Of a stretch of 64,000 nt of DNA, positions 1 to 49,336 are shown piece after piece. Every line of letters begins with the position of its first letter. The first letter of the stretch is position 1. The stretch spans positions 124,001 through 188,000 of IMG/VR virus record IMGVR_UViG_3300042391_000634. One strand, written 5' to 3'. The position numbers and the translations under genes are program-made. The notes beneath the pieces were generated by a model that saw only the letters and a list, made by a program, of their open reading frames with translations, ran no database searches and was not told the origin of the DNA.

Positions 1-948
1 GATTCGGATGTTGATGCTGACGTTGACATGGATACCGATATGGAATCTATGAGTGACGAAGGTTCAATGGATGATGAAGATGTTATGGATATGACTGGCG
101 CTTCAGATGATGAAGTTCTTAAAGTATTCAAGGCTATGAAACCAGAAGATGGTATTGTAGTTAAAAAAGACGGTAACAATGTAGAATTCGGTGACGGAGA
201 AGATGAATACATCATCAAATTAGATGGTGGAGATTCTGGTCTTGATGCTGGTATGGACATGGGAACTGATGTTGATTCTGAAATGGATTCTGAAATGGAT
301 TCTGAAATGGATTCTGACGTTGATACTGATATGGATACAGATATGGACACAGATGTTGATGCTGATACTGATGTTGACGCTGAAACAGATGAGGAAACAA
401 TCTATGAAATAGAATTAGACGAGGAAGACGAAATTGAAGAACCTAAAAAAGTTGAAGCTACTGAAGCTGCTCGCACAAAATCAAACCCTCATGGAAACAA
501 GAATGGTATGAATCGTGCTGGCTTACCAAGTAAAAAAACTTATAAGGCCGGTTCATCAATCAACGAAGAAGTTGAAACATTGAAAAAACAAAATGCTGAA
601 TATAAAAAGGCGTTAGTGTTATTCAAAGATAAATTAAATGAAGTTGCTGTGTTTAACGCAAACTTAGCTTACGCTACACGTTTGTTCACTGAACATTCAA
701 CTACAAAACAGGAGAAATTGAATATATTAAAGAGATTTGATACAGTTTCTACTATGAATGAAGCTAAGTCTTTATTCTCAACAATCAAAACTGAATTAGG
801 TTCAAAAACTACGGTTACCGAATCAGTTGCGAAAAAAATCTCTAACACTCCATCAACATCTTCTTCTACAGAGGTATTATCTGAGTCAAAAGCTTATGAA
901 AATCCTCAATTCAGTAGAATTAAAGAAATGATGAGAAAAATAAAATAA
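1..948 (+). CDS. Prohead core scaffolding protein (gp22-like), 5' truncated by the window edge
   Basis: Frame is open from base 1 (DSDVDADVDM...). Very acidic D/E/M low-complexity N-part, coiled-coil C-part (EVETLKKQNAEYKKALVLFKDKLNEV...NANLAYATRLF), directly upstream of the major capsid gene as in T4-like phages. Confidence 0.8.
   Translation, partial: DSDVDADVDMDTDMESMSDEGSMDDEDVMDMTGASDDEVLKVFKAMKPEDGIVVKKDGNNVEFGDGEDEYIIKLDGGDSGLDAGMDMGTDVDSEMDSEMDSEMDSDVDTDMDTDMDTDVDADTDVDAETDEETIYEIELDEEDEIEEPKKVEATEAARTKSNPHGNKNGMNRAGLPSKKTYKAGSSINEEVETLKKQNAEYKKALVLFKDKLNEVAVFNANLAYATRLFTEHSTTKQEKLNILKRFDTVSTMNEAKSLFSTIKTELGSKTTVTESVAKKISNTPSTSSSTEVLSESKAYENPQFSRIKEMMRKIK
274..317 (+). repeat. 12-bp tandem repeat GATTCTGAAATG, about 3.7 copies (DSEM repeats), inside the scaffold gene
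   Basis: Copies read directly at 274, 286, 298 and a partial copy at 310; degenerate DTDM/DVDA repeats follow. Confidence 0.9.
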
Positions 949-970: not shown

Positions 971-2746
971 ATGGGAGCATTATTAGAAAGCGGTATGGTT
1001 GGTAACATAGGTCTTAAGCACCTACGTGTTATCAAAGAAGATACCATCAAAAAATGGGACGAACTAGGATTCTTAGAAGGTCTAGAAGGTCACCAAAAAG
1101 ATAACATCGCGCAATTGTATGAAAACCAAGCGTCTTACTTAATCAACGAAGCGGCAGTAGCTGATGCGTCTGGTTCTTTCGAGACTGTAGTTTTCCCTAT
1201 CATTCGTCGTGTGTTCTCTAAATTATTAGCTAACGACATCGTGTCTGTTCAAGCTATGAACTTACCAATCGGTAAATTATTCTTCTTCATTCCTAAAATT
1301 CAGGAAAGAACTGGAACAGACCATTACTCACCTTATGGTGGAGCAAATAACGATTTAGGTTTACCTACAAATCCAACATCAGGATACCCTACAACTGCGA
1401 AAAGTCTTTACGATCGTTTTTACGAAGGATCTGACGCTAATGACCAAGGTCTTTTTGATTACTCAAAAGGTAAATATGCGGTAACAAGTTTAGTTGTTAA
1501 CGGTTTTACAACTTTTGCAAATGGTGTTGTAACTACAAGTTCATCTGCTTTAACAAGTGCAACTTGTGTAAACAAATCATATGTAATCATCGAGGTTACA
1601 GGATTTACATCGGCAGGTGCTGGTAAATTAAAAGGTGCTAACGGTAATGAAATGGATTCTGAAGAATTCTTAGCTTCATTACAAGTTACTACTACTGACG
1701 CAGGTTTGTTAGCTCACTTAGGTGTTACTGATTCAACTGCATTACCAATCAATATCGTAACTCAGAAATACGGTAAAGGTATTGTTGAATATGGTGCAAA
1801 AGCAGGTTCTGCTCAAGCTCAATATTATGATGTTTGTGATGCTGACGGTAAAATCTATATTCAAGTTGATCTTGAATCATATAGTGCAACTGCAGGTTTC
1901 ACTCCATTCACTTTAACCGGTTCAACTACACTTGCTACCTCTGAATTAGTTTCAACATTCCGTTTGTATGAGTCTTTAGAATTTGAAGAGCAAATTGGTG
2001 AAGTATCTTTCGATTTACAATCAGTAACAGTTTCTGTAACTGAAAGAAAATTAAGAGCTAGCTGGTCTCCAGAATTAGCACAAGATGTTAGTGCATTCCA
2101 CAACATCGACGCTGAAGCTGAATTAACAGCTTTATTATCAGAGCAAATCGCTGCTGAGGTTGACCGTGAAATCTTACGTGACTTACGTAAAGGTGCAGCA
2201 TGGAAAGCTAAATGGGATTACAATGAATGGAAATATGGTGGAAACTCTGGTGCAACCTTACAAGGTTATACTCAGAAAGATTGGAACCAAACTTTGGTTA
2301 CAAAAATCAACCAAATTTCTGCTCAAATCCACAAAACTACGTTAAGAGGTGGTGCTAACTGGATCGTTGTTTCTTCAGAAGTTTCTGCAGTATTTGATGA
2401 TTTAGAGTATTTCCACGTTTCTAACGCAGAACCAGAACAAGATCAGTATAACATGGGTATCGAGAAAATCGGTACAGTAGGTGGACGTTACCAAGTGTAT
2501 CGTGACCCTTACTTCCCAGCTAACAAAATCTTGATTGGTCATAAAGGTAAGTCTTTGTTAGATGCAGGTTATGTATACGCACCATATGTGCCATTACAAT
2601 TAACTCCTACAATGTACAATCCATTTAACATGACTCCGATTAAAGGTATCATGACTCGTTACGCGAAAAAAATGGTAAATAATCGCTACTTTGGCGTTAT
2701 TGACGTACAAGGTATTCAAGTGTTTGGTTTAGATACATTAAGATAA
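971..2746 (+). CDS. gp23: Major capsid protein (T4 gp23 family)
   Basis: Motifs KKWDELGFLEGL, FPIIRRVF, VSVQAMNLP, RKLRASWSPELAQD, IDAEAELTALLSEQIAAEVDREI, GYVYAPYVPL, GIMTRY. Confidence 0.97.
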   Translation: MGALLESGMVGNIGLKHLRVIKEDTIKKWDELGFLEGLEGHQKDNIAQLYENQASYLINEAAVADASGSFETVVFPIIRRVFSKLLANDIVSVQAMNLPIGKLFFFIPKIQERTGTDHYSPYGGANNDLGLPTNPTSGYPTTAKSLYDRFYEGSDANDQGLFDYSKGKYAVTSLVVNGFTTFANGVVTTSSSALTSATCVNKSYVIIEVTGFTSAGAGKLKGANGNEMDSEEFLASLQVTTTDAGLLAHLGVTDSTALPINIVTQKYGKGIVEYGAKAGSAQAQYYDVCDADGKIYIQVDLESYSATAGFTPFTLTGSTTLATSELVSTFRLYESLEFEEQIGEVSFDLQSVTVSVTERKLRASWSPELAQDVSAFHNIDAEAELTALLSEQIAAEVDREILRDLRKGAAWKAKWDYNEWKYGGNSGATLQGYTQKDWNQTLVTKINQISAQIHKTTLRGGANWIVVSSEVSAVFDDLEYFHVSNAEPEQDQYNMGIEKIGTVGGRYQVYRDPYFPANKILIGHKGKSLLDAGYVYAPYVPLQLTPTMYNPFNMTPIKGIMTRYAKKMVNNRYFGVIDVQGIQVFGLDTLR

Positions 2747-3140: not shown

Positions 3141-3536
3141 CTACCAGCTACGACAAGCCCAATATCTTGGTTTCCAACGAGGACCTGGATTATCACAATT
3201 CATACGTGCTCTAAAGTTCTTTCTTCTTTCAGGGTTATTTTTCTTAATAACCATTCTTTTACCTTTGGCGGATTTACCACCAAAACCGAAATTAACTTTA
3301 ACGACTTTACCTTTATCGTTTTTAACGTATACCTTAAATTTCTTTACGTCCCCTTGCATGATTTTACCCAATTGAACTTTACGTCCTTGATATTCCGCCT
3401 CGTTTAATAAACCACCATTATATTCAAAATTGGTGTTTTCAACAGAACCATCCTCATCTTCGTAAATTAATACGGGAGTTTGTTCGTTATATTCAAAAAG
3501 TCTTTCAAATTGGTCTTCTGTTATTGTTATTATCAT
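3141..3536 (-). CDS. Conserved T4-like phage small basic protein, probable head-associated
   Basis: LNEAEYQGRKV...KKFKVYVKN...KVNFG...PERRKNFRARMNCD...RYWACRSW resembles a conserved hypothetical family of T4-like aquatic phages; LNE-A is a candidate prohead protease site. Confidence 0.6.
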   Translation of the reverse strand: MIITITEDQFERLFEYNEQTPVLIYEDEDGSVENTNFEYNGGLLNEAEYQGRKVQLGKIMQGDVKKFKVYVKNDKGKVVKVNFGFGGKSAKGKRMVIKKNNPERRKNFRARMNCDNPGPRWKPRYWACRSW

Positions 3537-3964
3537 TATTTTTTCTTTTTAGGAACACAATTAGGAACTTCTTTACCGTTCTTCTTTTTCTTACCTACCA
3601 TTTCATATCCTTTCCAACAAGGGTCTTTTTCACCACTTTCCATTTTACCATCTTCATTCATACTAAACTGACCCATATCAGCGGTAACATCTTGTTTATC
3701 TTTACTTTTAGTTTCATTCATAAAGAAATCAAAAACTTGATCCATATTATTCTTAGCCTCAGATACATGATCGTCAGCCCAATCGTGACCATTTTTAATA
3801 ATGTTGTCCAATTCTTGTGGATCCATTTTCATCAACATCTCACATTGTCTATGTATTTGTTGTAAATTACTGAAAAACATGTAGTTTTCAGTTGATTGGT
3901 TTTCCTTTATAATCTTAGCAATATATTTTCTAAGATCGTTTTCTTTTAGTTTAATTACTTTCAT
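3536..3964 (-). CDS. Hypothetical, probable head-associated protein with a C-terminal CWKGY...VPNCVP motif
   Basis: N-terminal IKLKENDLRKYIAKIIKE helix; C-terminal DPCWKGYEMVGKKKKNGKEVPNCVP; TATTTAT box 6 nt upstream. Confidence 0.55.
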   Translation of the reverse strand: MKVIKLKENDLRKYIAKIIKENQSTENYMFFSNLQQIHRQCEMLMKMDPQELDNIIKNGHDWADDHVSEAKNNMDQVFDFFMNETKSKDKQDVTADMGQFSMNEDGKMESGEKDPCWKGYEMVGKKKKNGKEVPNCVPKKKK

Positions 3965-3979
3965 AATATATAAATAGTT

Positions 3980-9468: not shown

Positions 9469-10170
9469 TTATTCTAAAAATCCACCCAAAATACCGTCAT
9501 ATAGTTTCTTATAACGTTTAAGAGAGACTCTAATCTCTTTTGTTGATAAGGAGGTCATTTCTCGTAAAGAGAGTAAGATAAGGTTCTTATTGAATTTGTT
9601 ACCATCACCTACTTGAAATATCTTATCAAAATTACTGAAGATTTCAAGTAATGCGTAACCTAACTTTCTCTCGTTATCAGATAGATTTTTTTCTTTTTCA
9701 ATAAAATTTTCTAAATCAATTGTAAGTTTAGTGATAACAGAACTATAATCAATTACGAATTCATCCGTAACATATGAATGGTCTTTACTATCCTCAAAGT
9801 CGGAAGATATATCATCATAAGAAACCTGTCTATTCTGTTCTTTGGTATCTTTCTGTATTGCTCCCATAAGGTAGTTTTTACAGATGGTTCCAAAATATGA
9901 ATACGCTTTAGTATTCTTTGTGTGGTCAAATTTGTTAATCTTAGTTATAAGAAAAGACATTGTATCGGTATGAATTTCTTCAAATTCCATATCTTTTCTA
10001 TAAAGTTTATAACGTCGAATAATTGATTCAACCATTATAATTAGGGGTTCACGTAAATATTCATTGAATATCTTATTTCTTTCTGTTTCGTCACTACTTT
10101 CTAAGTAATTGACTACCGCCTTCTCTTGATCCTCCCCAAAATATATTTTTTGGGTTCTTGGTCTTGGCAT
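9469..10170 (-). CDS. gp55: Phage sigma factor, gp55-like (late transcription)
   Basis: Sigma region-2 pattern LIIMVESIIRRY...EEIHTDTMSFLITKINKFDHTKNTKAYSYFGTICKNYL, comparable to the gp55 F-D-x-x-K...A-Y-F-T-x-I motif; no clear region-4 HTH. Confidence 0.7.
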   Translation of the reverse strand: MPRPRTQKIYFGEDQEKAVVNYLESSDETERNKIFNEYLREPLIIMVESIIRRYKLYRKDMEFEEIHTDTMSFLITKINKFDHTKNTKAYSYFGTICKNYLMGAIQKDTKEQNRQVSYDDISSDFEDSKDHSYVTDEFVIDYSSVITKLTIDLENFIEKEKNLSDNERKLGYALLEIFSNFDKIFQVGDGNKFNKNLILLSLREMTSLSTKEIRVSLKRYKKLYDGILGGFLE

Positions 10171-16066: not shown

Positions 16067-16636
16067 TTACTTTGCTTTATTTACTCCTGTGATTTTACCT
16101 TTGAATATCGAATCTCCTACCTTTAATACTAAATTTTCATTGATTGAAGATGTTGTGGATGCAGTAAGGATTTGATTTAATTTTTCATCCATTACTTTAC
16201 GAACTGTATTCTCAATAAGAACGGCCATTGCATTCATATCAATATTGTTATTAACAATAGTTTGTTTTGGTTGTGCCGATGGTCTTGTTGCCACACCTTC
16301 TTGTTCCATTAAACGTTTTGCACCTTTAACAAAATCCATATCTAAAGTATCATTTAAAGAAATTTGTTGAATTGGATTTTCCATCATTGCTTTTTTAATT
16401 GCGTCAGGTAACTTTGAATTTTGAATTTTATCAACACTCATATTAGCACCTACAGGTCTTGTATTAGGTTGTTGTGGGGTCTGCATTTCCATTAATTCTG
16501 ATGGGTCGGATCTTAACATTTCACTATTAACATGACCTCTTTCATAATTTCCACCATCCACTTTGTTCATAATTTTTTTAGCTTGAACTAATTTTTTCAT
16601 TAAATCGTTAGACGATATTGTTCCTTGTTGTGCCAT
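16067..16636 (-). CDS. Hypothetical protein (late, possibly virion)
   Basis: 189-aa ORF with a TATTTAT box at 16641-16647 (minus). Confidence 0.55.
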   Translation of the reverse strand: MAQQGTISSNDLMKKLVQAKKIMNKVDGGNYERGHVNSEMLRSDPSELMEMQTPQQPNTRPVGANMSVDKIQNSKLPDAIKKAMMENPIQQISLNDTLDMDFVKGAKRLMEQEGVATRPSAQPKQTIVNNNIDMNAMAVLIENTVRKVMDEKLNQILTASTTSSINENLVLKVGDSIFKGKITGVNKAK

Positions 16637-16669
16637 GTTAATAAATATTTTATATAATAATAAACCTTT

Positions 16670-17404
16670 TTAAGAAAACATTAAACGCTTAATATTTTTA
16701 ATACTTTCTTGTAAATTTTTATTTTCTTCATCTTCCTCAGGATTAACAACCGGTTTTTCTTTCTGTTTTGGTTGTGGTAATTCTTTTACTTTTGGTTCCT
16801 CAGGTGTTGTTGGTTCAGGTTTTGATACAACTTTTTCTGGTTTAGTTTGAGGTTTTGGTTGTGGTAGTTCCGTTGTCTTCGGTTCCGTAGGTGTTACTTC
16901 GGGTTCCGTAGGGGTTACCTCAGGTTCCGTAGGGGTTACCTCAGGTTCCGTTTGAGTTTTAGGTTTAATTATTCTTGGTTTCTTAACCTCAGGTTTTTTA
17001 GTCCAATCTGTTGTTACATATGTTACACTTAGTCCGCTATCATCACCTTCTTTATAACCTGGTCTTTTTTCATCAAAAATTTCATCTGTTATTTCTGTTC
17101 CACTCATTCTACTTAACATAAATGTCCTCCATCCATGTTTGGCAAATCCTTTTTTTGATACGGACGGTGGTTGAACAAACGCTCTCATTACTAAATTACC
17201 CTTTTTACTTAATCCCAAAGCAACCACTTCCGCCTTTACACGATATCCAGCCTTTACACTATTTTTTTTAGGTTTTCTTGGCCCTGAATAATAGAATGTA
17301 ATTTTCTTCCTATTTTTGATGGCATCAACAATAGGTTTTGTTCTTGTCGTTTTAAGTGCAAGTTGTTCTTCTAATATTTCAAATATGGTATTTGTAAAAC
17401 TCAT
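16670..17404 (-). CDS. Stand-alone WYL-domain protein with a Pro/Glu/Thr-rich tail
   Basis: IVDAIKNRKKITFYY...GYRVKAEVVALG...GNLVMRAF...GWRTFMLSRM fits the WYL fold pattern (AI-x-x-R-x-x-I-x-F-x-Y ... R ... R-x-F-x-L-x-R-I); no HTH. Confidence 0.72.
   Translation of the reverse strand: MSFTNTIFEILEEQLALKTTRTKPIVDAIKNRKKITFYYSGPRKPKKNSVKAGYRVKAEVVALGLSKKGNLVMRAFVQPPSVSKKGFAKHGWRTFMLSRMSGTEITDEIFDEKRPGYKEGDDSGLSVTYVTTDWTKKPEVKKPRIIKPKTQTEPEVTPTEPEVTPTEPEVTPTEPKTTELPQPKPQTKPEKVVSKPEPTTPEEPKVKELPQPKQKEKPVVNPEEDEENKNLQESIKNIKRLMFS
16881..16950 (-). repeat. 21-bp tandem repeat, 3 copies (TEPEVTP), in the WYL gene
   Basis: GGTTCCGTAGG(T/G)GTTAC(T/C)TC(G/A) units on the plus strand. Confidence 0.85.
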
Positions 17405-18096
17405 TATGTTGTTGGGTGTCTATTATATTCTTTTTTAGTATTATAACTATTTTTACCTGTATTTTCAGTTCTAGTTAATATATCTGTTTTAGAACCTATG
17501 GTTCCATTTTCATCTTTTTGTCCTTTACCATATTCATCACCGTCGGATAGGGCGTCGGGATTTTTACTATTATAAAGATTTTTTTTAGTAAATTTATTTT
17601 TAACTAAATTTTCTGTTCTTTTTAATATATCAGTTTTAGAACCGACTTCTCCTGTTTCACCTTTTTGCCCTTTACCAAATTCGTCACCATTAGATAATGC
17701 ATTAGGGTTATTAGTATTATATTGATTATTTTTACCGTAATGATTTTTACTCATTAATAAATTTCTGTTTGCAATATCAATAGAGGTTCCTATAGCGACA
17801 TTATCTTCTACTTGACCTCTACCTTTTTCATCTCCATCAGCTAACGCATTTGGATTTGTAATACCATATTGGTTATTTTCATTATATGAATTTCTTCCTA
17901 AACTTGAAATTCTATTTTGAATGTCTGTTGTTGAACCTACAGTGCCGGTGTCTCCCTTTTGTCCCTTACCTTTTTCATCTCCACTAGATAATGAGTTTAC
18001 ATTCTGACTATTGTATAGGTTTTTTTCACCATAAGAATTTCTTGTTACAGATTCTTTTCTAAATTGTTCTGATATTTGGTCTAATTTTGTTGCCAT
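17404..18096 (-). CDS. Protein built of about 4.3 tandem 49-aa repeats
   Basis: Unit R-x5-(R/K)N-x-(Y/F)-x3-N-x-Y-x3-N-(P/V)-(N/D)-(A/S)-L-x-x-GDE-x-G-(K/R)-GQ-x6-G-(S/T)-x-x-DI repeats with an exact 49-aa period. Confidence 0.85.
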   Translation of the reverse strand: MATKLDQISEQFRKESVTRNSYGEKNLYNSQNVNSLSSGDEKGKGQKGDTGTVGSTTDIQNRISSLGRNSYNENNQYGITNPNALADGDEKGRGQVEDNVAIGTSIDIANRNLLMSKNHYGKNNQYNTNNPNALSNGDEFGKGQKGETGEVGSKTDILKRTENLVKNKFTKKNLYNSKNPDALSDGDEYGKGQKDENGTIGSKTDILTRTENTGKNSYNTKKEYNRHPTT

Positions 18097-18097
18097 A

Positions 18098-18589
18098 TTA
18101 TAACATTAATTTTTTTATTCTTTCAAGTTGTTCAAATAACCCCGTTAATTTTATTGATGATATTGAATTTTTTTCTGAATTAGAATTAAATTTAAATGAA
18201 GGTAACCAACTTGATTTTTTTGTATGTTTCTTTAAGAAACTATTTTTTCTTTCTCCTGTGGTGCTTGAAATATCATCAGATTGTTTTCTACCTTCTTTTC
18301 TATTTTGTATTAAATCTCTTTCTCCTTGGAGATGTTGTTTAGACCAATTGTCCATTAAATCACCACCAGCCAAGTCATACCTAATTTTATCAGCAACTTT
18401 ATCCATACTTTGTATGTCATGAATAATACGTTTAAGTTGACCATATGTTACTTTTTTATCGGTTAAGAGTTTTTTAGCTCTCATTACCCCATGCATATTT
18501 TGACCGTTAAGACCTGTAACCGTGTGGTTGATCTTATCTAAAATGTTCTGTGGTAAATCAAAGTCCCTATTTTTTAACTCTTTATTCAT
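18098..18589 (-). CDS. Hypothetical basic protein, probable head-associated
   Basis: 163-aa ORF ending LFEQLERIKKLML, in a late-box operon. Confidence 0.55.
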   Translation of the reverse strand: MNKELKNRDFDLPQNILDKINHTVTGLNGQNMHGVMRAKKLLTDKKVTYGQLKRIIHDIQSMDKVADKIRYDLAGGDLMDNWSKQHLQGERDLIQNRKEGRKQSDDISSTTGERKNSFLKKHTKKSSWLPSFKFNSNSEKNSISSIKLTGLFEQLERIKKLML

Positions 18590-19353: not shown

Positions 19354-19384
19354 ATAAATATCAAATGTTATGAAAGATATTTAT
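19354..19384. promoter_or_regulatory. Back-to-back TATTTAT late-promoter boxes (representative of 20 such sites)
   Basis: ATAAATA at 19354-19360 drives the leftward operon; TATTTAT at 19378-19384 drives the rightward structural genes. Confidence 0.7.
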
Positions 19385-19390
19385 ATTATA

Positions 19391-20929
19391 ATGAATAGAC
19401 AGAATATTTTAAACTATTACGGATCTAAATTGGATTTAAAGTTAGATTCATCGGAACTTTACGACTATCAGTTAACTACAAATGAGGTTGATTACGATAT
19501 AGATGTGTTAGATTTATCTACCCCAATCGTATATAGTGCACTTACAATTAACGATAGTTTAGAAGATTTGGGTTGCGCCAAAACAAGAATAACTCTTGTT
19601 GAGGATAACATAAATGATTTGTTAACTCCATATTCATATTTAGGATTATCAATGACTTTATCATATAATAATTTTGTTTCTTATTTTGGAACGGGTTATA
19701 CGTATACAATTTTAGATGGTAATAGATTTAAATTTACACTTTTAAACAATGAAAATCACTATTTTAAAATATACGGTTATAATCATACCGGTTTAACTTC
19801 TACAGTTTTATCAGGTTATACGGAATCAGAACTAATTTCAGGATTTACCACAAATGTTTACGTGGACAGAAGAAATATAGTAAATGTTTTTGCCTGTTCA
19901 TCACAAGCACCAAAAACAAACGTAAAACCTTGGGCGTTTAATTTTAATGAGGGTTTGGGAACCGATAAATGCACCCCAATATTAAAAAGAAGAACTGAAA
20001 AGGGATGGTCTTTGGATTTTATATTTAATAGAGAAAACTTATCTTGGTCAAATGGTAGTGTGTTTTATTATGTGGGTGTTAGAGGAGATAATGATATTGC
20101 CGATTATAGTGATAACAATTTATCTTTTGGATTTACATCAGATGGTAGAATTAAATGGACATCAAAACATTACTCAGGAACATGTGTAAATGATACATCA
20201 TATAATGAATCGTATTACACCTCGAGTGGACAAACTCCGACTTTATGTACAACGGGATTAACAAAAGATTTTAATGTTACAATTGTTTTTAATAGGTATA
20301 AACGTTACACCGATTGTGATATTGAAAATATGGGTGGACAAAATGATTTAATTATTGGTCCTCACCCTACGGATTATATTATTAATACTGGAGTCACTGC
20401 GGTTACATCTACTCAAGTAGTAACAGGATATTTGATTACGAACTCTTTAGATGTTTTAACAGGTGCAACACCTGTATATCAATATATTGAAACATTAAAT
20501 AAAAAATGGTCAGACGAAAGAGATAGAAGATTAGGAACCCTAAAAATATATTTAAATGGAAATTTAGTTTATAAATTAGAAGATTGGGAAGAGGTTATTC
20601 CTTCAAAAAGGGGAGAACAACCGTTTATTCAATCTTGGGGAGGGGGAACCGGATTAATGGGTGGAGTTCATGAAGGTGTTTGTTGTTTTAATATTAAATC
20701 AATAAAATATTATGAGGAACCATTAGATTTTATTCACGTTAAACATAACTTTATAACAAGATTAGATAACTTTGATTTTGAAATATGTAATGCACCTTGT
20801 GTGGATGATGTATATCAATATGTCCCACCAACCGCAACACCTACCCCTGTACCAACTAGTACCCCAACTCCAACCCCAACATCAACCCCAACTCCCACTC
20901 CAACGGCAACGCCTACACCGACAATATAA
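19391..20929 (+). CDS. Virion protein with a LamG/concanavalin-like domain and a C-terminal Pro/Thr tail
   Basis: NVTIVFNRY...GTLKIYLNGNLVYK...NIKSIKYYEEPL is LamG-like. The ORF track starts at 19370, but a TATTTAT box at 19378-19384 favours the ATG at 19391. Confidence 0.6.
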   Translation: MNRQNILNYYGSKLDLKLDSSELYDYQLTTNEVDYDIDVLDLSTPIVYSALTINDSLEDLGCAKTRITLVEDNINDLLTPYSYLGLSMTLSYNNFVSYFGTGYTYTILDGNRFKFTLLNNENHYFKIYGYNHTGLTSTVLSGYTESELISGFTTNVYVDRRNIVNVFACSSQAPKTNVKPWAFNFNEGLGTDKCTPILKRRTEKGWSLDFIFNRENLSWSNGSVFYYVGVRGDNDIADYSDNNLSFGFTSDGRIKWTSKHYSGTCVNDTSYNESYYTSSGQTPTLCTTGLTKDFNVTIVFNRYKRYTDCDIENMGGQNDLIIGPHPTDYIINTGVTAVTSTQVVTGYLITNSLDVLTGATPVYQYIETLNKKWSDERDRRLGTLKIYLNGNLVYKLEDWEEVIPSKRGEQPFIQSWGGGTGLMGGVHEGVCCFNIKSIKYYEEPLDFIHVKHNFITRLDNFDFEICNAPCVDDVYQYVPPTATPTPVPTSTPTPTPTSTPTPTPTATPTPTI

Positions 20930-22784: not shown

Positions 22785-25682
22785 ATGAAAGAGGTTATCT
22801 CTCAGGAGGTTATTGAAGGCTTCCTCAATGGTGGAGACGATGAAATGTATATCGTCGGAGTTGAATACGACTACCCAACCAACACAATTTACAAGATTAT
22901 ACAAGACCCAATTGAGGGTAAAATTATTAAAACTGATACATTTACTCCGTTTTTATGGGTAGGTGATTTAACAGGTTTAAATTTCTATAACAACTCAAAA
23001 GCCATGCAAAAGAAACGTATGGGTGAGTTTGGTATATTAATTGAAAAGTTAGATACACATAATAACGAACGTTTAGAAAATGGTATGACCCATATCGTTA
23101 AGAGTATTAAATCTTATACGGATTTAGTTTCGTTTTTTAGAATGGGTGGATTGAATCCTTGGGACGAAAAAGTTAGACATAATTTTACAATCTTAAACCC
23201 TGTTGAACAATACCTTATACAAAAGAAAAAAAGATTATTTAAAGGTATTGATGAGTATAGTGGTGTGAATAGATTTGTGTTTGATATTGAAACCACAGGT
23301 CTTGACCCTGAAACTTGCGTTATTATATTAATTGGGGTTAAGGATAACCGTGGTATGAATGAAACTATATCAGCGTTCGGTGAAAATGGAGAAAAGAAAT
23401 GTATTGAAAGATTTTTCAAATATATAAAAGATTTAAAACCAACCATTGTTGCAGGATATAACTCTGCCTTCTTTGACTGGCCCTTTATTTTAAAACGTGC
23501 TGAAATACTTGGTGTCGATGTTGATGGTTTAACACAAATCTTTACATCTCAAGGAATGAAAGAGAAAGAAGGTATGTTAAAACTTGCCAATGAGGTTGAA
23601 CCATATAAACAACACGTTATATGGGGATTTAATATTATTGATATTGCACATTCTGTAAGACGCGCTCAAGCGATTAATTCTGAAATTAAATCTTGGGGAT
23701 TAAAATATATTACAACATATTTGGAAAAAGAAAAACCTAATCGGGTTTATGTTGAAGGTTCTAAAATTTCAAAAATATATTTGGATAATGAAAGTTATTA
23801 TGTAAATCCAAAGACAGGTGGATATAAACAAATTGGAGAACCTGGAACAGAAAATTTAACACAAAAATATCCAGGTAAGTATGAGATATGGACAGGTAGA
23901 AAAATTGTAGAACAATATCTAGATGATGACTTGTATGAAACAATGGTTGTAGATGATTCATTCTCTCAATCAACATTTTTACTATCAAAACTCGTTCCTA
24001 CAACGTATGAAAGAATTGCCACAATGGGAACCGCAACACTATGGAAAATAATAATGTTAGCTTGGTCTTATGAAAATAATTTAGCAATACCAGCAAAAGA
24101 TGAGAAACGTGCTTTCACGGGAGGTTTATCTCGTTTATTAAATGTTGGGTTTGCAAAGAACATTGTTAAGTTTGACTATGCGTCACTTTACCCATCTATT
24201 CAATTAGTTTATGATGTGTTTCCCGCTTGTGATGTAATGGGTGTTCAAAAATCAATGTTAAAATATTTCCGTGATATTCGTATTAAATATAAACATCTTG
24301 CGGGTTCGTTAGCAAAAACAAATCCCGTTGAAGCTGAGATGTATGATAGAAAACAATTACCAATTAAGATTTTTATCAACGCATATTTTGGTAGTTTATC
24401 CGCTCCACACGTATTCCCTTGGGGAGAAATGGATTCAGGTGAAACCATTACCTGTATTGGTCGTCAGTGTTTAAGAATGATGATTATGTTCTATATGAAG
24501 AAAGGATATAAACCACTTGTAATGGATACGGATGGTGTGAACTTTGAAACACCTGAAGGAATTGAAAATACAAAGTATATCGGTAAAGGATTAAATGAAT
24601 TGGTTATAGAAGGAAAAGAATATTCAGGTATTGAAGCAGATACCGCAGAGTTTAATGATATATTCATGAGAAATGAAATGGGGTTAGATATTGATTATGT
24701 TGCACCGGCTTGTATTAATGTTTCTCGTAAGAACTATATTATTAAGATGATGAAGAAAGGTAAAGAGAAAATTAAATTAACAGGTAATACAATTAAATCT
24801 AAAAAGTTACAAACATATGTGGTGGAATTTTTAGATGAAGGATTAAAGTATTTGTTAAATGGTGATGGACATTCTTTTGTGGAATTATATTATGATTATG
24901 TAAGTAAAATATTTGAGAAAGAAATACCATTGTCTAAAATGGCAAACAAAGCACGTGTTAAACAAAGTGTTAATGAATACAAAAAGTATGTAACGAAAAC
25001 TACTAAAGCTGGTTCATTAATGTCTCGTCAAGCACATATGGAATTAATTATGAATAATAATTATCCCGCAGGTTTAGGAGATACAATTTATTATATTAAT
25101 AACGGAGTAAAAAAATCATCAGGCGACGTTCAGAAAATAACTAAACCAACAAAGAAACAACAAGAAGAGTTTACGGCGAAGAACGGATATCCAATGCCCG
25201 ATAATTTTATTGAGGTTAATTGTTATATGATTGATGAAAAGGAAATAACAAATAATCCAGATTTAAAAGGTGATTATAATGTTCCTCGTTATTTAAACAT
25301 TTTTAATAAACGTGTAGAACCATTATTAGTTGTTTTCAATCCAGCAATTAGAGAAGATATATTAATTGAAGACCCAAAAGATAGACAATACTTTACAAAG
25401 GCACAATGTGATTTAGTTAATGGTTTTCCATTAAAAGAAGAAGGTCAAGATAAGTTAGATGAGGTTATGACTTTATCTGATAGTGAGGTTATATTTTGGA
25501 ATAAAGTTCAAAGAGACCCTTTCTTTATGTATGTAGAAAATAGTTTAGAACTTGCTGACCAATATTGGGTGGAACATAATAGAAAAGTTGTTACACTACA
25601 AGCTGAAAGTATTAAATCTAATGAAGAAGAAATAATCGAGAATAACAATCACGATTATGCGTTTCACGCAATAGAAATTTAG
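22785..25682 (+). CDS. gp43: Family B DNA polymerase (gp43-like) with a 3'-5' exonuclease domain
   Basis: ExoI FDIETTG, ExoII GYNSAFFDWPFI, ExoIII YLDDD; polymerase motifs FDYASLYPS, KIFINAYFG, MDTDG. Confidence 0.96.
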   Translation: MKEVISQEVIEGFLNGGDDEMYIVGVEYDYPTNTIYKIIQDPIEGKIIKTDTFTPFLWVGDLTGLNFYNNSKAMQKKRMGEFGILIEKLDTHNNERLENGMTHIVKSIKSYTDLVSFFRMGGLNPWDEKVRHNFTILNPVEQYLIQKKKRLFKGIDEYSGVNRFVFDIETTGLDPETCVIILIGVKDNRGMNETISAFGENGEKKCIERFFKYIKDLKPTIVAGYNSAFFDWPFILKRAEILGVDVDGLTQIFTSQGMKEKEGMLKLANEVEPYKQHVIWGFNIIDIAHSVRRAQAINSEIKSWGLKYITTYLEKEKPNRVYVEGSKISKIYLDNESYYVNPKTGGYKQIGEPGTENLTQKYPGKYEIWTGRKIVEQYLDDDLYETMVVDDSFSQSTFLLSKLVPTTYERIATMGTATLWKIIMLAWSYENNLAIPAKDEKRAFTGGLSRLLNVGFAKNIVKFDYASLYPSIQLVYDVFPACDVMGVQKSMLKYFRDIRIKYKHLAGSLAKTNPVEAEMYDRKQLPIKIFINAYFGSLSAPHVFPWGEMDSGETITCIGRQCLRMMIMFYMKKGYKPLVMDTDGVNFETPEGIENTKYIGKGLNELVIEGKEYSGIEADTAEFNDIFMRNEMGLDIDYVAPACINVSRKNYIIKMMKKGKEKIKLTGNTIKSKKLQTYVVEFLDEGLKYLLNGDGHSFVELYYDYVSKIFEKEIPLSKMANKARVKQSVNEYKKYVTKTTKAGSLMSRQAHMELIMNNNYPAGLGDTIYYINNGVKKSSGDVQKITKPTKKQQEEFTAKNGYPMPDNFIEVNCYMIDEKEITNNPDLKGDYNVPRYLNIFNKRVEPLLVVFNPAIREDILIEDPKDRQYFTKAQCDLVNGFPLKEEGQDKLDEVMTLSDSEVIFWNKVQRDPFFMYVENSLELADQYWVEHNRKVVTLQAESIKSNEEEIIENNNHDYAFHAIEI

Positions 25683-26794
25683 ATAACAATAATAGATGAA
25701 GGCATTGCTCTAAATTTAAGTGCCTTATTAAGATTCTCCGCCTCACCCGCTTTTCTTTCAAGAAGTTTGTCGGGGCGGAGTCTTTCTAATCTAGCCATAA
25801 GTTCCTCAACCAATTTAGATTTTTCATCTTTACCTTCCGTAATTAATGATGAGTAATCTAATTTAACTGAACTATCTGGAACTTGTAAGTCCCCACTAAA
25901 TTTACCCCAAATACGACCTAAACCTTCCTTAGCATAAGCAATCAAATACTTTCTAATCCAGTTTTGTGCGGGTTTATTTAATTGGTCCCATGTTAATTCT
26001 TCAGTCATAACATCAGATGGTAATTTAATTACATCTTTGTTATTTTTTAAACAAGTGTCTCTATCCATAGTATCATAATACCAATACCAAACGTTGTAAT
26101 TTTTTTGTTGTATAGAACCAAAATCAAATTTACCACCAGGTACATTGTGTAAGTGAACTAATTTTTTACCTTCAGGACCCGCAGTAATTCTATAAGTTAA
26201 ATCGCCACCAATTAATCTATTTTTCATAGACCTATCTTGCATCCTCAATAATAAGTCAAATGCTGGCATCATAAAGTAAGAACCCGCGTTACCAGCTTGA
26301 GCAAATCCACCCGCACCACCAAATCCCATACCACCAAGACCACCAAATCCAGCCATAAACGGATCAACAAATGAATCATTTAGTTCGGCACGTGTAAACC
26401 ACAAAAGTTCGTTTATTTCACGACCGGCAGGGATTTCATATGTTTGAGTTCCACCTGTAAGTTCAAAAAAATCCTTTTTCAATTCACTTGTTCCTCCAGC
26501 CTGTAAACCTACAATTTTAGAATATGAGTGTGTATATTGAGTTTCGTAATCTAAACTTCTTGTTGTAAATGCTCTTGATAATGATTGTGTATCCACATCT
26601 AAACCAGCTAAGGCCGACCATTGAGATTCGATTAACCAATCACTAACATATTGTTCATATTCAGATAAAGATAACTCCATAAAGGTATCCATTTGTTCTT
26701 CCGTAAGTTCAATACCACGAACTGGCATACCTAAAAGATGAAATACTTGGGTATATAATTTATCTTTCTCCGCTTGTGAAATAATTTGAGACAT
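25679..26794 (-). CDS. gp13: Neck/head-completion protein (gp13-like)
   Basis: N-terminal HLLGMPVRGIELTEEQMD and C-terminal WIRKYLIAYAKEGLGRIWGKF...LITEG match the gp13 pattern; TATTTAT box upstream. Confidence 0.75.
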   Translation of the reverse strand: MSQIISQAEKDKLYTQVFHLLGMPVRGIELTEEQMDTFMELSLSEYEQYVSDWLIESQWSALAGLDVDTQSLSRAFTTRSLDYETQYTHSYSKIVGLQAGGTSELKKDFFELTGGTQTYEIPAGREINELLWFTRAELNDSFVDPFMAGFGGLGGMGFGGAGGFAQAGNAGSYFMMPAFDLLLRMQDRSMKNRLIGGDLTYRITAGPEGKKLVHLHNVPGGKFDFGSIQQKNYNVWYWYYDTMDRDTCLKNNKDVIKLPSDVMTEELTWDQLNKPAQNWIRKYLIAYAKEGLGRIWGKFSGDLQVPDSSVKLDYSSLITEGKDEKSKLVEELMARLERLRPDKLLERKAGEAENLNKALKFRAMPSSIIVI

Positions 26795-48401: not shown

Positions 48402-48450
48402 TAAGAATATTAATAAAAGTTGGGATATTTATACATATAAAACAAATATT

Positions 48451-48658: not shown

Positions 48659-49336
48659 ATGTTAGAGAAAAAATTATTAGAAGAAGTTAAACGTTTTAAT
48701 GCTATCAACAAGTATAGTAAGAAAATGATTACAGAGCAAGATGCTCCACCACCTGCACCAATAGATGCACCAATAGACGCACCGACAGATGTACCAACGG
48801 ATGTTCCACCACCGCCACCAGCGGGAGATATGGGAGCACCAATGGACACCCCACCACCGGCAGGTGATATGGGAACTCCTCCAATGGATGAAGCAGGTAT
48901 GGGAGGAGATACAGAAGAAATTGATATTACAGATTTAGTTAACATGACTAAGAATATCAAAAACGATCTTGAAAATAATAAACAAGACAATTCTGCGGTT
49001 ATTAATAAAATGGATGACGTATTCACTAAATTAAATGACTTAGAAGGTAAGTTGGCTCAAATGGACCAAGTAATGGCTAAGATAGACCAATTGGGAGCGT
49101 CGGTTGAAGCTAACAAACCTAAAAGTGAAGTTGAAAAACTTGAAATGAGATCTTTAGATTCCTATCCGTTTAATGAAAAACCACAAGAATTCTTTGCACA
49201 CAAACAAGGTGAAATGAGAGCTAGTGGTAAGAACGAATATGTATTAACTAAGGATGATGTTGAGAACTATGCACCTGATGCGTTAAGAAGTTCATTTAAC
49301 CCAAACGAAGACCAAAAAGATGAATATAGCTTCTAA
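48659..49336 (+). CDS. Probable head-associated protein with Pro/Asp-rich repeats and a coiled coil
   Basis: N-terminal LLEEVKRFNAINKY...MITE-QD; DAP/DVP and PPPAGDMG repeats; heptad C-half. Confidence 0.6.
   Translation: MLEKKLLEEVKRFNAINKYSKKMITEQDAPPPAPIDAPIDAPTDVPTDVPPPPPAGDMGAPMDTPPPAGDMGTPPMDEAGMGGDTEEIDITDLVNMTKNIKNDLENNKQDNSAVINKMDDVFTKLNDLEGKLAQMDQVMAKIDQLGASVEANKPKSEVEKLEMRSLDSYPFNEKPQEFFAHKQGEMRASGKNEYVLTKDDVENYAPDALRSSFNPNEDQKDEYSF

What the first reader, a model, noticed from the sequence alone, without database searches (positions are those of the whole stretch)
895..948. Scaffold C-terminal motif is shared with several small late proteins: a candidate capsid-targeting signal
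Seen: the scaffold ends ENPQFSRIKEMMRKIK. Similar amphipathic helices end the WYL protein (LQESIKNIKRLMFS, 16670-17404) and the 163-aa protein (LFEQLERIKKLML, 18098-18589), and begin the 225-aa protein (LLEEVKRFNAINKY, 48659). The same proteins, plus 3141, 3536 and 18582, carry (L/I/V)-x-E sites near their termini (LNE-A, IKE-N, IEE-K, LEE-Q, ITE-Q), as does gp23 (LINE-A). Known: T4 gp21 cleaves after (I/L)-x-E, and T4 internal proteins use a short capsid-targeting sequence. Inference: this phage uses an E-x-x-x-(R/N)-I-K-x-(L/M)-M helix to load cargo into the prohead, and the protease then trims it off.
Basis: partly seen in the sequence, partly recalled or inferred. Interest (0 to 1): 0.7.

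Follow-up and report, generated by a model that had tools for sequence, protein, structure and literature searches.

The report
Portable terminal tag shared with scaffold
The last dozen residues of this jumbo phage's scaffold protein belong to a conserved helical tag that also ends the head protease and sits at the very start or end of many unrelated proteins, most likely a signal that loads them into the assembling head, although packaging itself has not been shown.

Summary
The window lies in a 335-kb T4-like jumbo phage of the freshwater, bS21-encoding, Bacteroidetes-infecting group.

Within this genome alone the scaffold's hexamer is not significantly like other C-termini (P 0.13-0.31). 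(L/I/V)-x-E near a terminus occurs in 63% of all genes, so that list carries no information on its own.

Relatives change the picture:
- In about 75 relatives the scaffold ends ..R-M-K-D-L-M-x-K-I-K and the S77 prohead protease ends ..R-M-K-K-L-M.., sharing a core.
- A longer form, hydrophobic-x-E-x-hydrophobic-x-[RK]-hydrophobic-K-x-hydrophobic-hydrophobic, ends the 163-aa, 244-aa (WYL-fold) and a 414-aa protein. It begins the 225-aa, 181-aa, 469-aa and 569-aa proteins.
- Across three complete genomes, 20 of 21 regex matches lie within 14 residues of a terminus.
- The tag follows disordered linkers, is kept by synonymous-only change, and sits on non-homologous bodies, including PPK2, a CCA-type nucleotidyltransferase, HD, GNAT and cell-wall hydrolases.
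- N-terminal copies are followed by hydrophobic-x-Glu about 5 residues later.

Best reading: a capsid-targeting, cargo-loading peptide that a gp21-like protease removes. This is a new variant of the T4 CTS and herpesvirus scaffold-tail principle. Packaging and cleavage remain unproven.

The parts
1..948 (+). Scaffold (gp22-position) gene, 3' part. The full 420-aa acidic protein starts 314 nt upstream of the window. It lies directly between the S77 protease and the MCP.
   Evidence: Gene order TerL-portal-245aa-141aa-protease-scaffold-MCP. pI 4.1.
898..945 (+). Scaffold C-terminal tail ENPQFSRIKEMMRKIK. The core RIKEMM is at 916-933 and follows a Ser/Thr-rich linker.
   Evidence: Conserved as ..AYENPQF[KRS]R[MIV]K[DE][LM]M.K[IL]K in 46 distinct relatives.
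971..2746 (+). Major capsid protein, gp23-like (591 aa). Residues 1-60 (971-1150) are a probable propeptide ending L-I-N-E|A.
   Evidence: PF07068 in homologues. 30% identity to T4 gp23. E60 is at least 90% conserved in 124 diverse MCPs.
18098..18589 (-). 163-aa basic protein (pI 9.9): a folded domain at 1-110, a disordered linker, and a C-terminal tag LFEQLERIKKLML at 18101-18139.
   Evidence: F, E, K and L of the tag are invariant in 142 family members.
16670..17404 (-). 244-aa protein: an N-terminal WYL-fold domain, a hypervariable Pro/Glu/Lys/Thr linker, and a C-terminal tag LQESIKNIKRLMFS at 16673-16714.
   Evidence: Alignment A5. AF2 model. Foldseek top hits are DriD, BrxR and CapW WYL domains. 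The Pfam WYL hit is below threshold.
48659..48736 (+). N-terminal 26 residues of the 225-aa protein: a tag copy (L-L-E-E-V-K-R-F-N-A-I-N-K-Y) followed by M-I-T-E|Q, then a Pro-rich linker.
   Evidence: The pattern L.EE[VL].R[FY]..INKY..KMI[MT]EQ is kept in 80 relatives and in G005.
3902..3964 (-). N-terminal 21 residues of the 142-aa protein (gene 3536-3964). This is a second tag type (I-K-L-K-E-N-D-L..I-I-K-E|N), not the scaffold motif.
   Evidence: 7 of 9 matches in the genome lie at residues 5-8 of an N-terminus.
3483..3536 (-). N-terminal 18 residues of the 131-aa protein (gene 3141-3536): second tag type (I-T-I-T-E-D-Q-F-E-R-L-F-E). It is absent from the fused 231-aa orthologue in G005.
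19354..19360 (-). TATTTAT box 16 nt upstream of the 251-aa gene. That gene heads the 251-163-230-244 gene run. The same box precedes TerL, portal, protease, scaffold, sheath and tube.
48426..48432 (+). TATTTAT box upstream of the 67-aa/225-aa gene pair.

Best explanation
The scaffold's C-terminal tail is one copy of a short amphipathic-helix tag. Its core is [RK]-hydrophobic-K-x-[LM]-[ML]. The prohead protease carries the same core in its C-terminal tail. A longer form (hydrophobic-x-E-x-hydrophobic-x-[RK]-hydrophobic-K-x-hydrophobic-hydrophobic) is attached through disordered linkers to the extreme N- or C-terminus of at least six other unrelated proteins per genome.

The most likely mechanism is that all carriers dock by this helix onto one receptor inside the assembling prohead. 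That receptor would be the inner face or N-terminal propeptide of the gp23-like capsid protein, or the scaffold core itself. Carriers would thus be co-assembled as core or cargo. The gp21-type protease would then cut after nearby hydrophobic-x-Glu sites, freeing the cargo from the tag and degrading the scaffold.

Shown: the motif, its conservation, its restriction to termini, its modularity and its linker architecture; protein-level selection; the shared promoter box; and the presence of an S77 protease and of a conserved L-x-E|A site in the MCP.

Inferred: binding to a prohead receptor, packaging, cleavage, and ejection into the host.
For: 1. The two bona fide prohead-core proteins carry the core. 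The scaffold ends ..R[MIV]K[DE][LM]M.K[IL]K and the S77 protease (PF03420) ends ..[RK]MK[KN]LM..LD.FLSK in about 75 relatives.
2. A profile trained only on other carriers ranks these two tails in the top 2e-5 to 4e-4 of proteome windows.
3. The tag is conserved in the 163-aa and 244-aa families down to 44% identity, the 414-aa family down to 40%, the 225-aa family in 80 loci, and the 181-aa family.
4. Terminal restriction: 20 of 21 regex hits in three complete genomes are terminal. In G006, the complete genome least used to define the pattern (one locus of its record had supplied instances), 9 of 10 are terminal. PSSM top hits are terminal more often than with column-permuted controls.
5. Modularity: a near-identical 14-residue tag sits on non-homologous bodies. 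In orthologues it can be replaced by the second tag type. A gene that is split in this genome gained its own tag on the downstream half.
6. Architecture: folded domain, then disordered linker, then terminal helix.
7. Synonymous-only differences among identical tags, and different codons in different families, point to protein-level selection.
8. Nine of 12 N-terminal tags are followed by [LIVM]-x-E ending 4-10 residues later, against a null of 22% (P 1.4e-4). All 12 have a Glu within 5 residues. MCP E60 (L-x-E|A) is nearly invariant.
9. All 8 carrier transcription units have the TATTTAT box that precedes the head and tail genes, against 20% of all genes.
10. The carriers are plausible ejected effectors: PPK2, glucosaminidase, M23 peptidase, CCA-type nucleotidyltransferase, HD, GNAT, PG-binding and WYL-fold proteins. 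The 163-aa domain resembles a domain found in large phage proteins annotated as XkdF or prohead protease (a lead only).
11. Precedent: T4 uses CTS propeptides, and gp21 and Alt have C-terminal propeptides (PMC9026906). The C-terminal propeptide of the SPN3US protease has been proposed to target it to the prohead (PMC7411985).
Against: - There is no direct evidence that any carrier is in a virion, that the tag binds capsid or scaffold, or that it is cleaved.
- These phages are uncultured, and the carriers have no homologues in GenBank phage isolates.
- The link between the scaffold/protease core and the longer cargo tag rests on six residues. Within this genome alone it is not significant.
- The scaffold lacks the upstream L-x-E-x-hydrophobic part of the tag.
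- There is no covariation: in clades where the 163-aa protein ends ..L-L, the scaffold still ends ..L-M.
- In Microcystis phage Mel-JY01 the homologous scaffold tail (..RMKKLAGIVK) has no other terminal copies.
- The TATTTAT box also precedes non-structural genes such as a thioredoxin-like gene, so it does not prove late expression.
- The L-x-E inside the tag would cut N-terminal copies in the middle if it were used.
Confidence: 0.55

Rival explanations
1. Two unrelated things look alike. The scaffold and protease tails form a capsid-binding helix of the classical kind. The longer terminal tag on the other proteins serves a different common purpose, such as localisation to the membrane or cell wall, to another phage-made structure, or to a chaperone.
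For: - Only the 6-residue core is shared, and the scaffold lacks the L-x-E-x-hydrophobic part.
- The within-genome similarity is not significant.
- Several carriers are cell-wall enzymes (glucosaminidase, M23, PG-binding). Amphipathic terminal helices could aid their envelope access.
- Mel-JY01 has the scaffold tail without other copies.
Against: - The cargo-only profile picks out both the scaffold and protease tails at about the 1e-4 level in two genomes.
- Carriers also include cytoplasmic-type enzymes (PPK2, CCA-type nucleotidyltransferase, HD, GNAT) and a WYL-fold protein.
- The tag has an invariant Glu and near-neutral charge, unlike typical membrane-targeting helices. This last point is my own knowledge and was not tested.
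- A Glu at fixed spacing follows the N-terminal tags.
Confidence: 0.22
2. The tag is a terminal degron or adaptor-recognition signal, for example for a Clp- or Lon-type unfoldase. It would time the destruction or handling of these proteins and would not serve packaging.
For: - Known unfoldase signals sit at either terminus and combine basic and hydrophobic residues (own knowledge).
- The tag occurs at either terminus after flexible linkers.
Against: - The prohead protease already degrades the scaffold in T4-like systems (PMC9958956).
- There is no reason for both scaffold and head protease to share a cytoplasmic degron with PPK2 or cell-wall hydrolases.
- The conserved Glu after N-terminal tags fits a gp21-type P1 residue.
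Confidence: 0.12
3. The resemblance is a by-product of composition (a Lys/Ile/Glu-rich, AT-rich genome) or of a shared DNA signal or gene cassette overlapping gene ends.
For: - Column-permuted profiles also give somewhat more terminal hits than positional expectation, 3.7-5.3 of 20-24.
- A conserved TATTTAT box lies just upstream of many tagged genes.
Against: - The real profile gives 7, 13 and 13 terminal hits, against 3.7, 4.5 and 5.3 for permuted ones.
- The regex has 1 internal hit in about 297,000 residues.
- Three identical tags differ only at synonymous sites.
- The 163-aa and 244-aa families use different codons for the same residues.
- C-terminal copies cannot be explained by a 5' cassette.
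Confidence: 0.04

Closest known systems
T4 capsid targeting sequence (CTS) of internal proteins IPII/IPIII and Alt, and the C-terminal propeptides of gp21 and Alt (PMC9026906, PMC9958956)
   Same: - Both are T4-type head modules with an S77 protease.
- Both use short terminal propeptides on unrelated, non-essential proteins.
- Both have Glu-terminated cleavage-type sites next to the tag, and the MCP is cut at L-x-E|A.
- The T4 protease also has a processed C-terminal tail..AEAMKKAL in T4.
   Different: - There is no sequence similarity to the T4 CTS (MKTYQEFIAE).
- Here one motif is used at either terminus, and its core is shared with the scaffold and the protease.
- The T4 review states that its CTS is not found in other core proteins and that core localisation 'remains mysterious' (PMC9958956).
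- Function is unproven here.
Shared C-terminal capsid-binding tail of scaffold and maturation protease. Examples: herpesvirus assembly protein and protease, HK97 protease, and the 80alpha scaffold with SaPI1 CpmB (own knowledge); the C-terminal propeptide of the SPN3US protease (PMC7411985).
   Same: The scaffold and the protease end in the same short helix at the extreme C-terminus, after a flexible segment and next to protease-type sites.
   Different: - In those systems the tail is shared through nested or related genes, or by one competing scaffold.
- Here the motif is also spread over many unrelated enzymes and occurs at N-termini.
- Binding to the MCP was not established.
Encapsulin cargo-loading peptides (own knowledge)
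   Same: Both involve an HK97-fold shell. Both use a short terminal peptide on a flexible linker that is sufficient to define a changeable set of enzyme cargos.
   Different: - The consensus is different, and encapsulins have no maturation protease.
- Encapsulin peptides are mostly C-terminal.
- This is a virus whose cargo would be ejected.
Injected polyvalent proteins and P1 Dar proteins (PMC5512222, PMC7824862, PMC9024508)
   Same: The effector types are similar (GNAT, nucleotide-handling and cell-wall enzymes), and they are presumed to travel with the DNA. The 163-aa domain resembles a domain in large phage proteins labelled XkdF or prohead protease.
   Different: Here the effectors are separate small genes, each with its own tag, rather than one multidomain polypeptide.

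Membership tests
T4-type capsid targeting sequence (CTS) propeptide | Phage has a gp21-family (S77) prohead protease and a gp23-type capsid protein cut at (L/I)-x-E | tested here: met
   PF03420 at 3e-20 and 29% identity to T4 gp21. MCP L-I-N-E|A, with E60 at least 90% conserved. Cleavage itself was not observed.
T4-type capsid targeting sequence (CTS) propeptide | Short N-terminal propeptide ending at a protease site | tested here: inconclusive
   Met in form by the N-terminal copies: 9 of 12 are followed by [LIVM]-x-E and all 12 by Glu within 5 residues. The copies named in the finding (scaffold, 163 aa, 244 aa) are C-terminal.
T4-type capsid targeting sequence (CTS) propeptide | Sequence related to the T4 IPII/IPIII CTS | tested here: not met
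   Comparison with MKTYQEFIAE (CTS string from own knowledge; not fetched or aligned here) shows no similarity to the consensus derived.
T4-type capsid targeting sequence (CTS) propeptide | Tag is sufficient to package a foreign protein and is removed in the head | not testable with these tools
   Needs fusion and packaging experiments.
Scaffold/protease shared C-terminal capsid-binding tail | Same short motif at the extreme C-terminus of both scaffold and maturation protease | tested here: met
   R-[MI]-K-x-[LM]-M occurs in both across about 75 relatives. In this genome the scaffold has RIKEMM and the protease has RMSKLM.
Scaffold/protease shared C-terminal capsid-binding tail | Tail binds the major capsid protein | not testable with these tools
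   Needs a binding assay or a procapsid structure.
Encapsulin-type cargo-loading peptide | Terminal peptide on a flexible linker, attached to diverse enzymes, with an HK97-fold shell | tested here: met
   Disordered linkers. Diverse enzyme bodies. gp23-type MCP.
Encapsulin-type cargo-loading peptide | Encapsulin consensus peptide and an encapsulin shell gene | tested here: not met
   The consensus is different, and the shell is a phage capsid protein within a full T4-like head module.
WYL domain (label given to the 244-aa protein) | Match to the WYL family by sequence or fold | tested here: inconclusive
   Pfam gives 17.1 bits, below the 21.8 cut-off. The Foldseek PDB top 20 are nearly all WYL proteins (DriD, BrxR, CapW, PafBC), with probability 1.0, E 4e-3 to 3e-2 and rmsd 2.5-3.8 A over about 95 residues. 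The fold is supported; ligand binding is unknown.

The most novel reading that the evidence does not exclude
These uncultured T4-like jumbo phages run a general cargo-loading system that works from either protein end. One roughly 12-residue helix is the same handle used by the scaffold and the head protease. It would suffice to put any protein into the prohead, and a Glu-specific cut would release it. The phage would then carry a quickly exchangeable, injectable kit that can be read directly from sequence in metagenomes. The kit would include cell-wall hydrolases, PPK2, tRNA-end repair enzymes (CCA-type nucleotidyltransferase plus HD), GNAT, and a WYL-fold nucleic-acid binder.
Probability: 0.4. 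Interest if true: 0.8.

Novelty: new variant of a known kind. Interest (0 to 1): 0.68.

Why it matters
How proteins other than IPII/IPIII reach the T4-type prohead core is still called mysterious in the current review (PMC9958956). This lineage offers one recognisable peptide on the scaffold, the protease and a changing set of enzymes, at either terminus.

If it is the loading signal, three things follow:
- It identifies the common docking principle of the core.
- It lets the packaged and ejected proteome of uncultured jumbo phages be predicted from sequence alone.
- It provides a compact tag for loading foreign proteins into large capsids.

Even if the function differs, a terminal tag this specific (1 internal match in about 297,000 residues) marks a shared pathway that is worth identifying.

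Tried and rejected
- Complex prediction of the MCP (alignment A3) with the last 60 scaffold residues (A4) gave 'no answer'. It is not evidence either way.
- Covariation between the scaffold tail and cargo tags across clades was not seen.
- A whole-genome scan of Microcystis phage Mel-JY01 for copies of its scaffold tail (..RMKKLAGIVK) found only the scaffold.
- tblastn of the 163-aa protein, the 244-aa protein and the scaffold C-terminal part against GenBank phages gave no match, so no isolate proteomics can be borrowed.
- PDB fold search of the 163-aa model found nothing significant.
- Pfam and PHROGs gave nothing for the scaffold, 163-aa, 414-aa, 181-aa and 569-aa proteins.
- The word-indexed homologue search for the MCP returned only close relatives. 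The exhaustive search was used for the alignment instead.
- Pairwise comparison of all C-terminal 14-mers is dominated by paralogue families, and the trio does not stand out.
- The leave-one-out scan with 11-residue windows did not recover the scaffold from the 163-aa and 244-aa proteins.
- The late-sigma-like 233-aa protein (9469-10170) scores with the profile but is judged a chance hit.
- The idea that the tag reflects a DNA-level signal was rejected on synonymous variation.

Full report
**What is there.** The window is bases 124001-188000 of a single 335,630-bp, 31% GC virus record. Around the finding lies a T4-type head module. Its order is large terminase, gp20-type portal (PF07230), a 245-aa gene, a 141-aa gene, an S77 prohead protease (PF03420; 227 aa; 404-1087 nt upstream of the window), and a 420-aa very acidic protein in the gp22 position. 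That last protein's final 315 codons open the window. A 591-aa gp23-like capsid protein follows. A small bS21-like gene on the opposite strand, together with hundreds of freshwater IMG/VR relatives, places the genome among the uncultured bS21-encoding jumbo phages of Bacteroidetes (PMC9723584).

**The observation.** All quoted strings are present at the stated coordinates. The strict pattern [RN]IK.[LM]M occurs three times in every ATG-ORF of the genome, and each lies within 4 residues of a stop. That pattern was chosen after looking. When only the scaffold hexamer is scored against all C-terminal windows of this genome, the result is not significant (P 0.13-0.31). (L/I/V)-x-E within 30 residues of a terminus is found in 63% of all genes. 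From this genome alone the finding is therefore suggestive at best.

**Relatives.** More distant T4-like phages keep a related scaffold end..ERMKKLAGIVK in Microcystis phage Mel-JY01 and ..SRWQKLAGIIK in Flavobacterium phage immuto. T4 gp21 ends ..AEAMKKAL in the equivalent position.

In 34 loci and 686 database relatives the 163-aa protein keeps L-F-E-x-hydrophobic-x-[RK]-[IF]-K-x-L-x. The neighbouring 244-aa protein keeps L-x-E-x-[IL]-x-[RKN]-I-K-x-L-[ML], down to 44% overall identity. Glu, Lys and Leu of the tag are invariant.

**More carriers.** A profile of these tails found further copies, all at termini and all conserved in their own families:
- A 414-aa protein ends ..I-N-E-E-V-E-K-M-K-K-M-F-K-Y-N.. 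(kept at 34-40% identity).
- The 225-aa protein of the window carries an N-terminal copy in 80 relatives.
- N-terminal copies also occur on a 181-aa, a 569-aa and a 469-aa protein.

A 12-position regex gave the following in three complete genomes:

| Genome | N-terminal | C-terminal | Internal |
|---|---|---|---|
| G000 (this genome) | 2 | 2 | 0 |
| G005 (310 kb) | 4 | 3 | 0 |
| G006 (317 kb, capsid 67% identical) | 6 | 3 | 1 |

G006 contributed least to defining the pattern; one locus of its record (L243) had supplied tag instances. Column-permuted profiles give far fewer terminal hits.

A profile trained only on these other carriers places the scaffold tail in the top 2e-5 to 8e-5 of all proteome windows. 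It places the protease tail in the top 5e-5 to 4e-4, in both G000 and G005. This is the statistical link between the cargo-type tag and the two known core proteins. It is real but rests on six residues.

**Nature of the tag.**
- It is a predicted helix with a high hydrophobic moment.
- It sits at the end of a disordered, hypervariable linker. The 244-aa family shows a conserved domain, a Pro/Glu/Lys/Thr linker varying by about 90 residues, and then the conserved 14-mer. The 163-aa model is folded to residue 110, disordered to 148, and helical at 149-162.
- It is modular. G000's 181-aa protein and G005's HD-domain protein share 14 of 14 similar residues at the N-terminus and nothing else.
- In 52%-identical orthologues of the 181-aa protein the tag is replaced by a different N-terminal peptide, I-L-I-T-E-S-Q-Y-K-L-I-T-E.
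- Selection acts on the protein. Three identical tags in G006 differ only at synonymous sites, and the 163-aa and 244-aa families use different codons.

**Protease sites.** MCP residue E60 (L-I-N-E|A) is at least 90% conserved in 124 diverse gp23-like proteins, with consensus L-L-x-E-A. This fits a T4-like specificity. Nine of 12 N-terminal tags are followed by [LIVM]-x-E ending 4-10 residues later, usually exactly 5, against a 22% background (P 1.4e-4). The other three have M-M-E, D-S-E or A-V-E at the same place. C-terminal tags begin with the conserved L-x-E. No cleavage has been observed.

**Who carries it.** In this genome most bodies are unannotated. The 244-aa N-domain has a WYL fold. 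The 163-aa protein is basic, and its domain resembles one embedded in large phage proteins labelled XkdF or prohead protease (a lead only). In relatives the tag sits on PPK2, a glucosaminidase, an M23 peptidase, a PG-binding protein, a PolyA_pol/CCA-type nucleotidyltransferase, an HD protein and a GNAT. These are the kinds of enzymes known or proposed to travel with phage DNA (PMC5512222, PMC7824862). All eight carrier transcription units have the TATTTAT box that also precedes terminase, portal, protease, scaffold, sheath and tube genes (20% of genes overall). The box is not exclusive to structural genes.

**Interpretation.** The best reading (0.55) is a capsid-targeting, cargo-loading peptide that uses the same docking principle as the scaffold and protease tails, removed by the gp21-type protease. 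It combines two known ideas. One is the T4 CTS and the C-terminal propeptides of gp21 and Alt (PMC9026906). The other is the shared scaffold/protease tail of herpesviruses, HK97 and 80alpha/SaPI1 (own knowledge), together with the SPN3US protease propeptide (PMC7411985). The form, however, has not been described: one motif, either terminus, on many enzymes.

The rivals are:
- A separate function for the cargo-type tag, with only a coincidental core match to the scaffold (0.22).
- A terminal degron or adaptor signal (0.12).
- Composition or DNA artefact (0.04, largely refuted).

Weak points: no proteomics, binding or cleavage data; no covariation between scaffold and cargo tags; and no extra copies in Mel-JY01.

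**Verdict.** The feature is a new variant of a known kind. It is of good interest because it makes the composition of the prohead core of uncultured jumbo phages directly testable.

Noticed in passing
window 3141-3964 (both genes), and genome-wide: A second terminal tag, [ILV]-[TK]-E-[SDNE]-[QD]-[LFY]-x-x-[LIY]-[ILFV] ending in hydrophobic-x-E. It has 9 matches in the genome, 7 of them at residues 5-8 of an N-terminus, including the 131-aa and 142-aa proteins. It can replace the scaffold-type tag in orthologues (L246-L248).
   Followed up: partly
window 3141-3964 versus G005 25087-25782: The 142-aa and 131-aa genes are one fused 231-aa gene in the relative G005. In this genome the split is exactly after ..CVPKKKK. 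The downstream half has gained a 23-residue N-terminal extension carrying the second tag. L-N-E|A is conserved in both forms.
   Followed up: yes
genome-wide; in the window at 3970-3976, 16641-16647, 19354-19360 and 48426-48432: (G)ATATTTATA is the most enriched 8-mer upstream of genes, usually 5-20 nt before the ATG. It precedes terminase, portal, protease, scaffold, sheath and tube genes and many small genes. It is probably a phage promoter with very short leaders. TATTTATA is the reverse complement of the T4 late promoter TATAAATA. A gp55-like late sigma candidate lies at 9469-10170.
   Followed up: partly
G000 about 15-47 kb (outside the window): A third recurring N-terminal peptide, M-K-L-[LIM]-D-I-[ILV]-x-E, occurs on at least five proteins behind the same promoter box. 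In length and in its I-x-E ending it resembles the 10-residue T4 CTS.
   Followed up: no
window 17404-18096 (minus strand): The 230-aa protein between the 163-aa and 244-aa genes is built of four repeats of about 45 residues (..N-x-Y-N-x-x-N-P-x-A-L-S-D-G-D-E-x-G-K-G-Q..). Copy number differs among relatives (125-314 aa).
   Followed up: no
window 16067-16636 (minus strand): The 189-aa protein has a conserved N-terminal helix ..D-L-M-K-K-L-V-Q-A-K-K-I-M-N-K-V. This resembles the protease tail (D-R-M-K-K-L-M; in G006, D-L-M-K-K-L-T). It also has an almost invariant C-terminus, K-V-G-D-S-I-F-K-G-K-I-T-G-V-N-K-A-K. It may be a further carrier.
   Followed up: no
window 1-420: The N-terminal half of the scaffold is an extreme Asp/Glu/Met/Thr low-complexity tract, with D-S-E-M and D-T-D-M repeats. 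Its length varies from 387 to 502 aa among relatives.
   Followed up: no
1654-1845 nt upstream of the window (L001), minus strand: A 63-aa bS21-like ribosomal protein gene lies on the opposite strand between the portal and protease genes. This is the marker of the phage group described in PMC9723584.
   Followed up: partly
G000 about 245-249 kb and 274-333 kb (outside the window): Two paralogue families have strongly conserved C-termini, ..N-[YF]-N-x-Q-K-[SQ]-R-[FY]-G-L and ..F-Y-N-[YH]-I-I-K-N-I. They dominate the all-against-all comparison of C-terminal 14-mers.
   Followed up: no
G005 263609-267578: Three adjacent genes each carry the N-terminal tag: a 235-aa unknown, a 392-aa CCA-type nucleotidyltransferase and a 188-aa HD-domain protein. 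A split, tagged CCA-adding/HD pair suggests tRNA-end repair enzymes as cargo. These genes are absent from this window's genome.
   Followed up: partly
window 19370-20929: The 519-aa protein ends in a Thr-Pro repeat tract (..T-P-T-P-T-P-T-S-T-P..).
   Followed up: no
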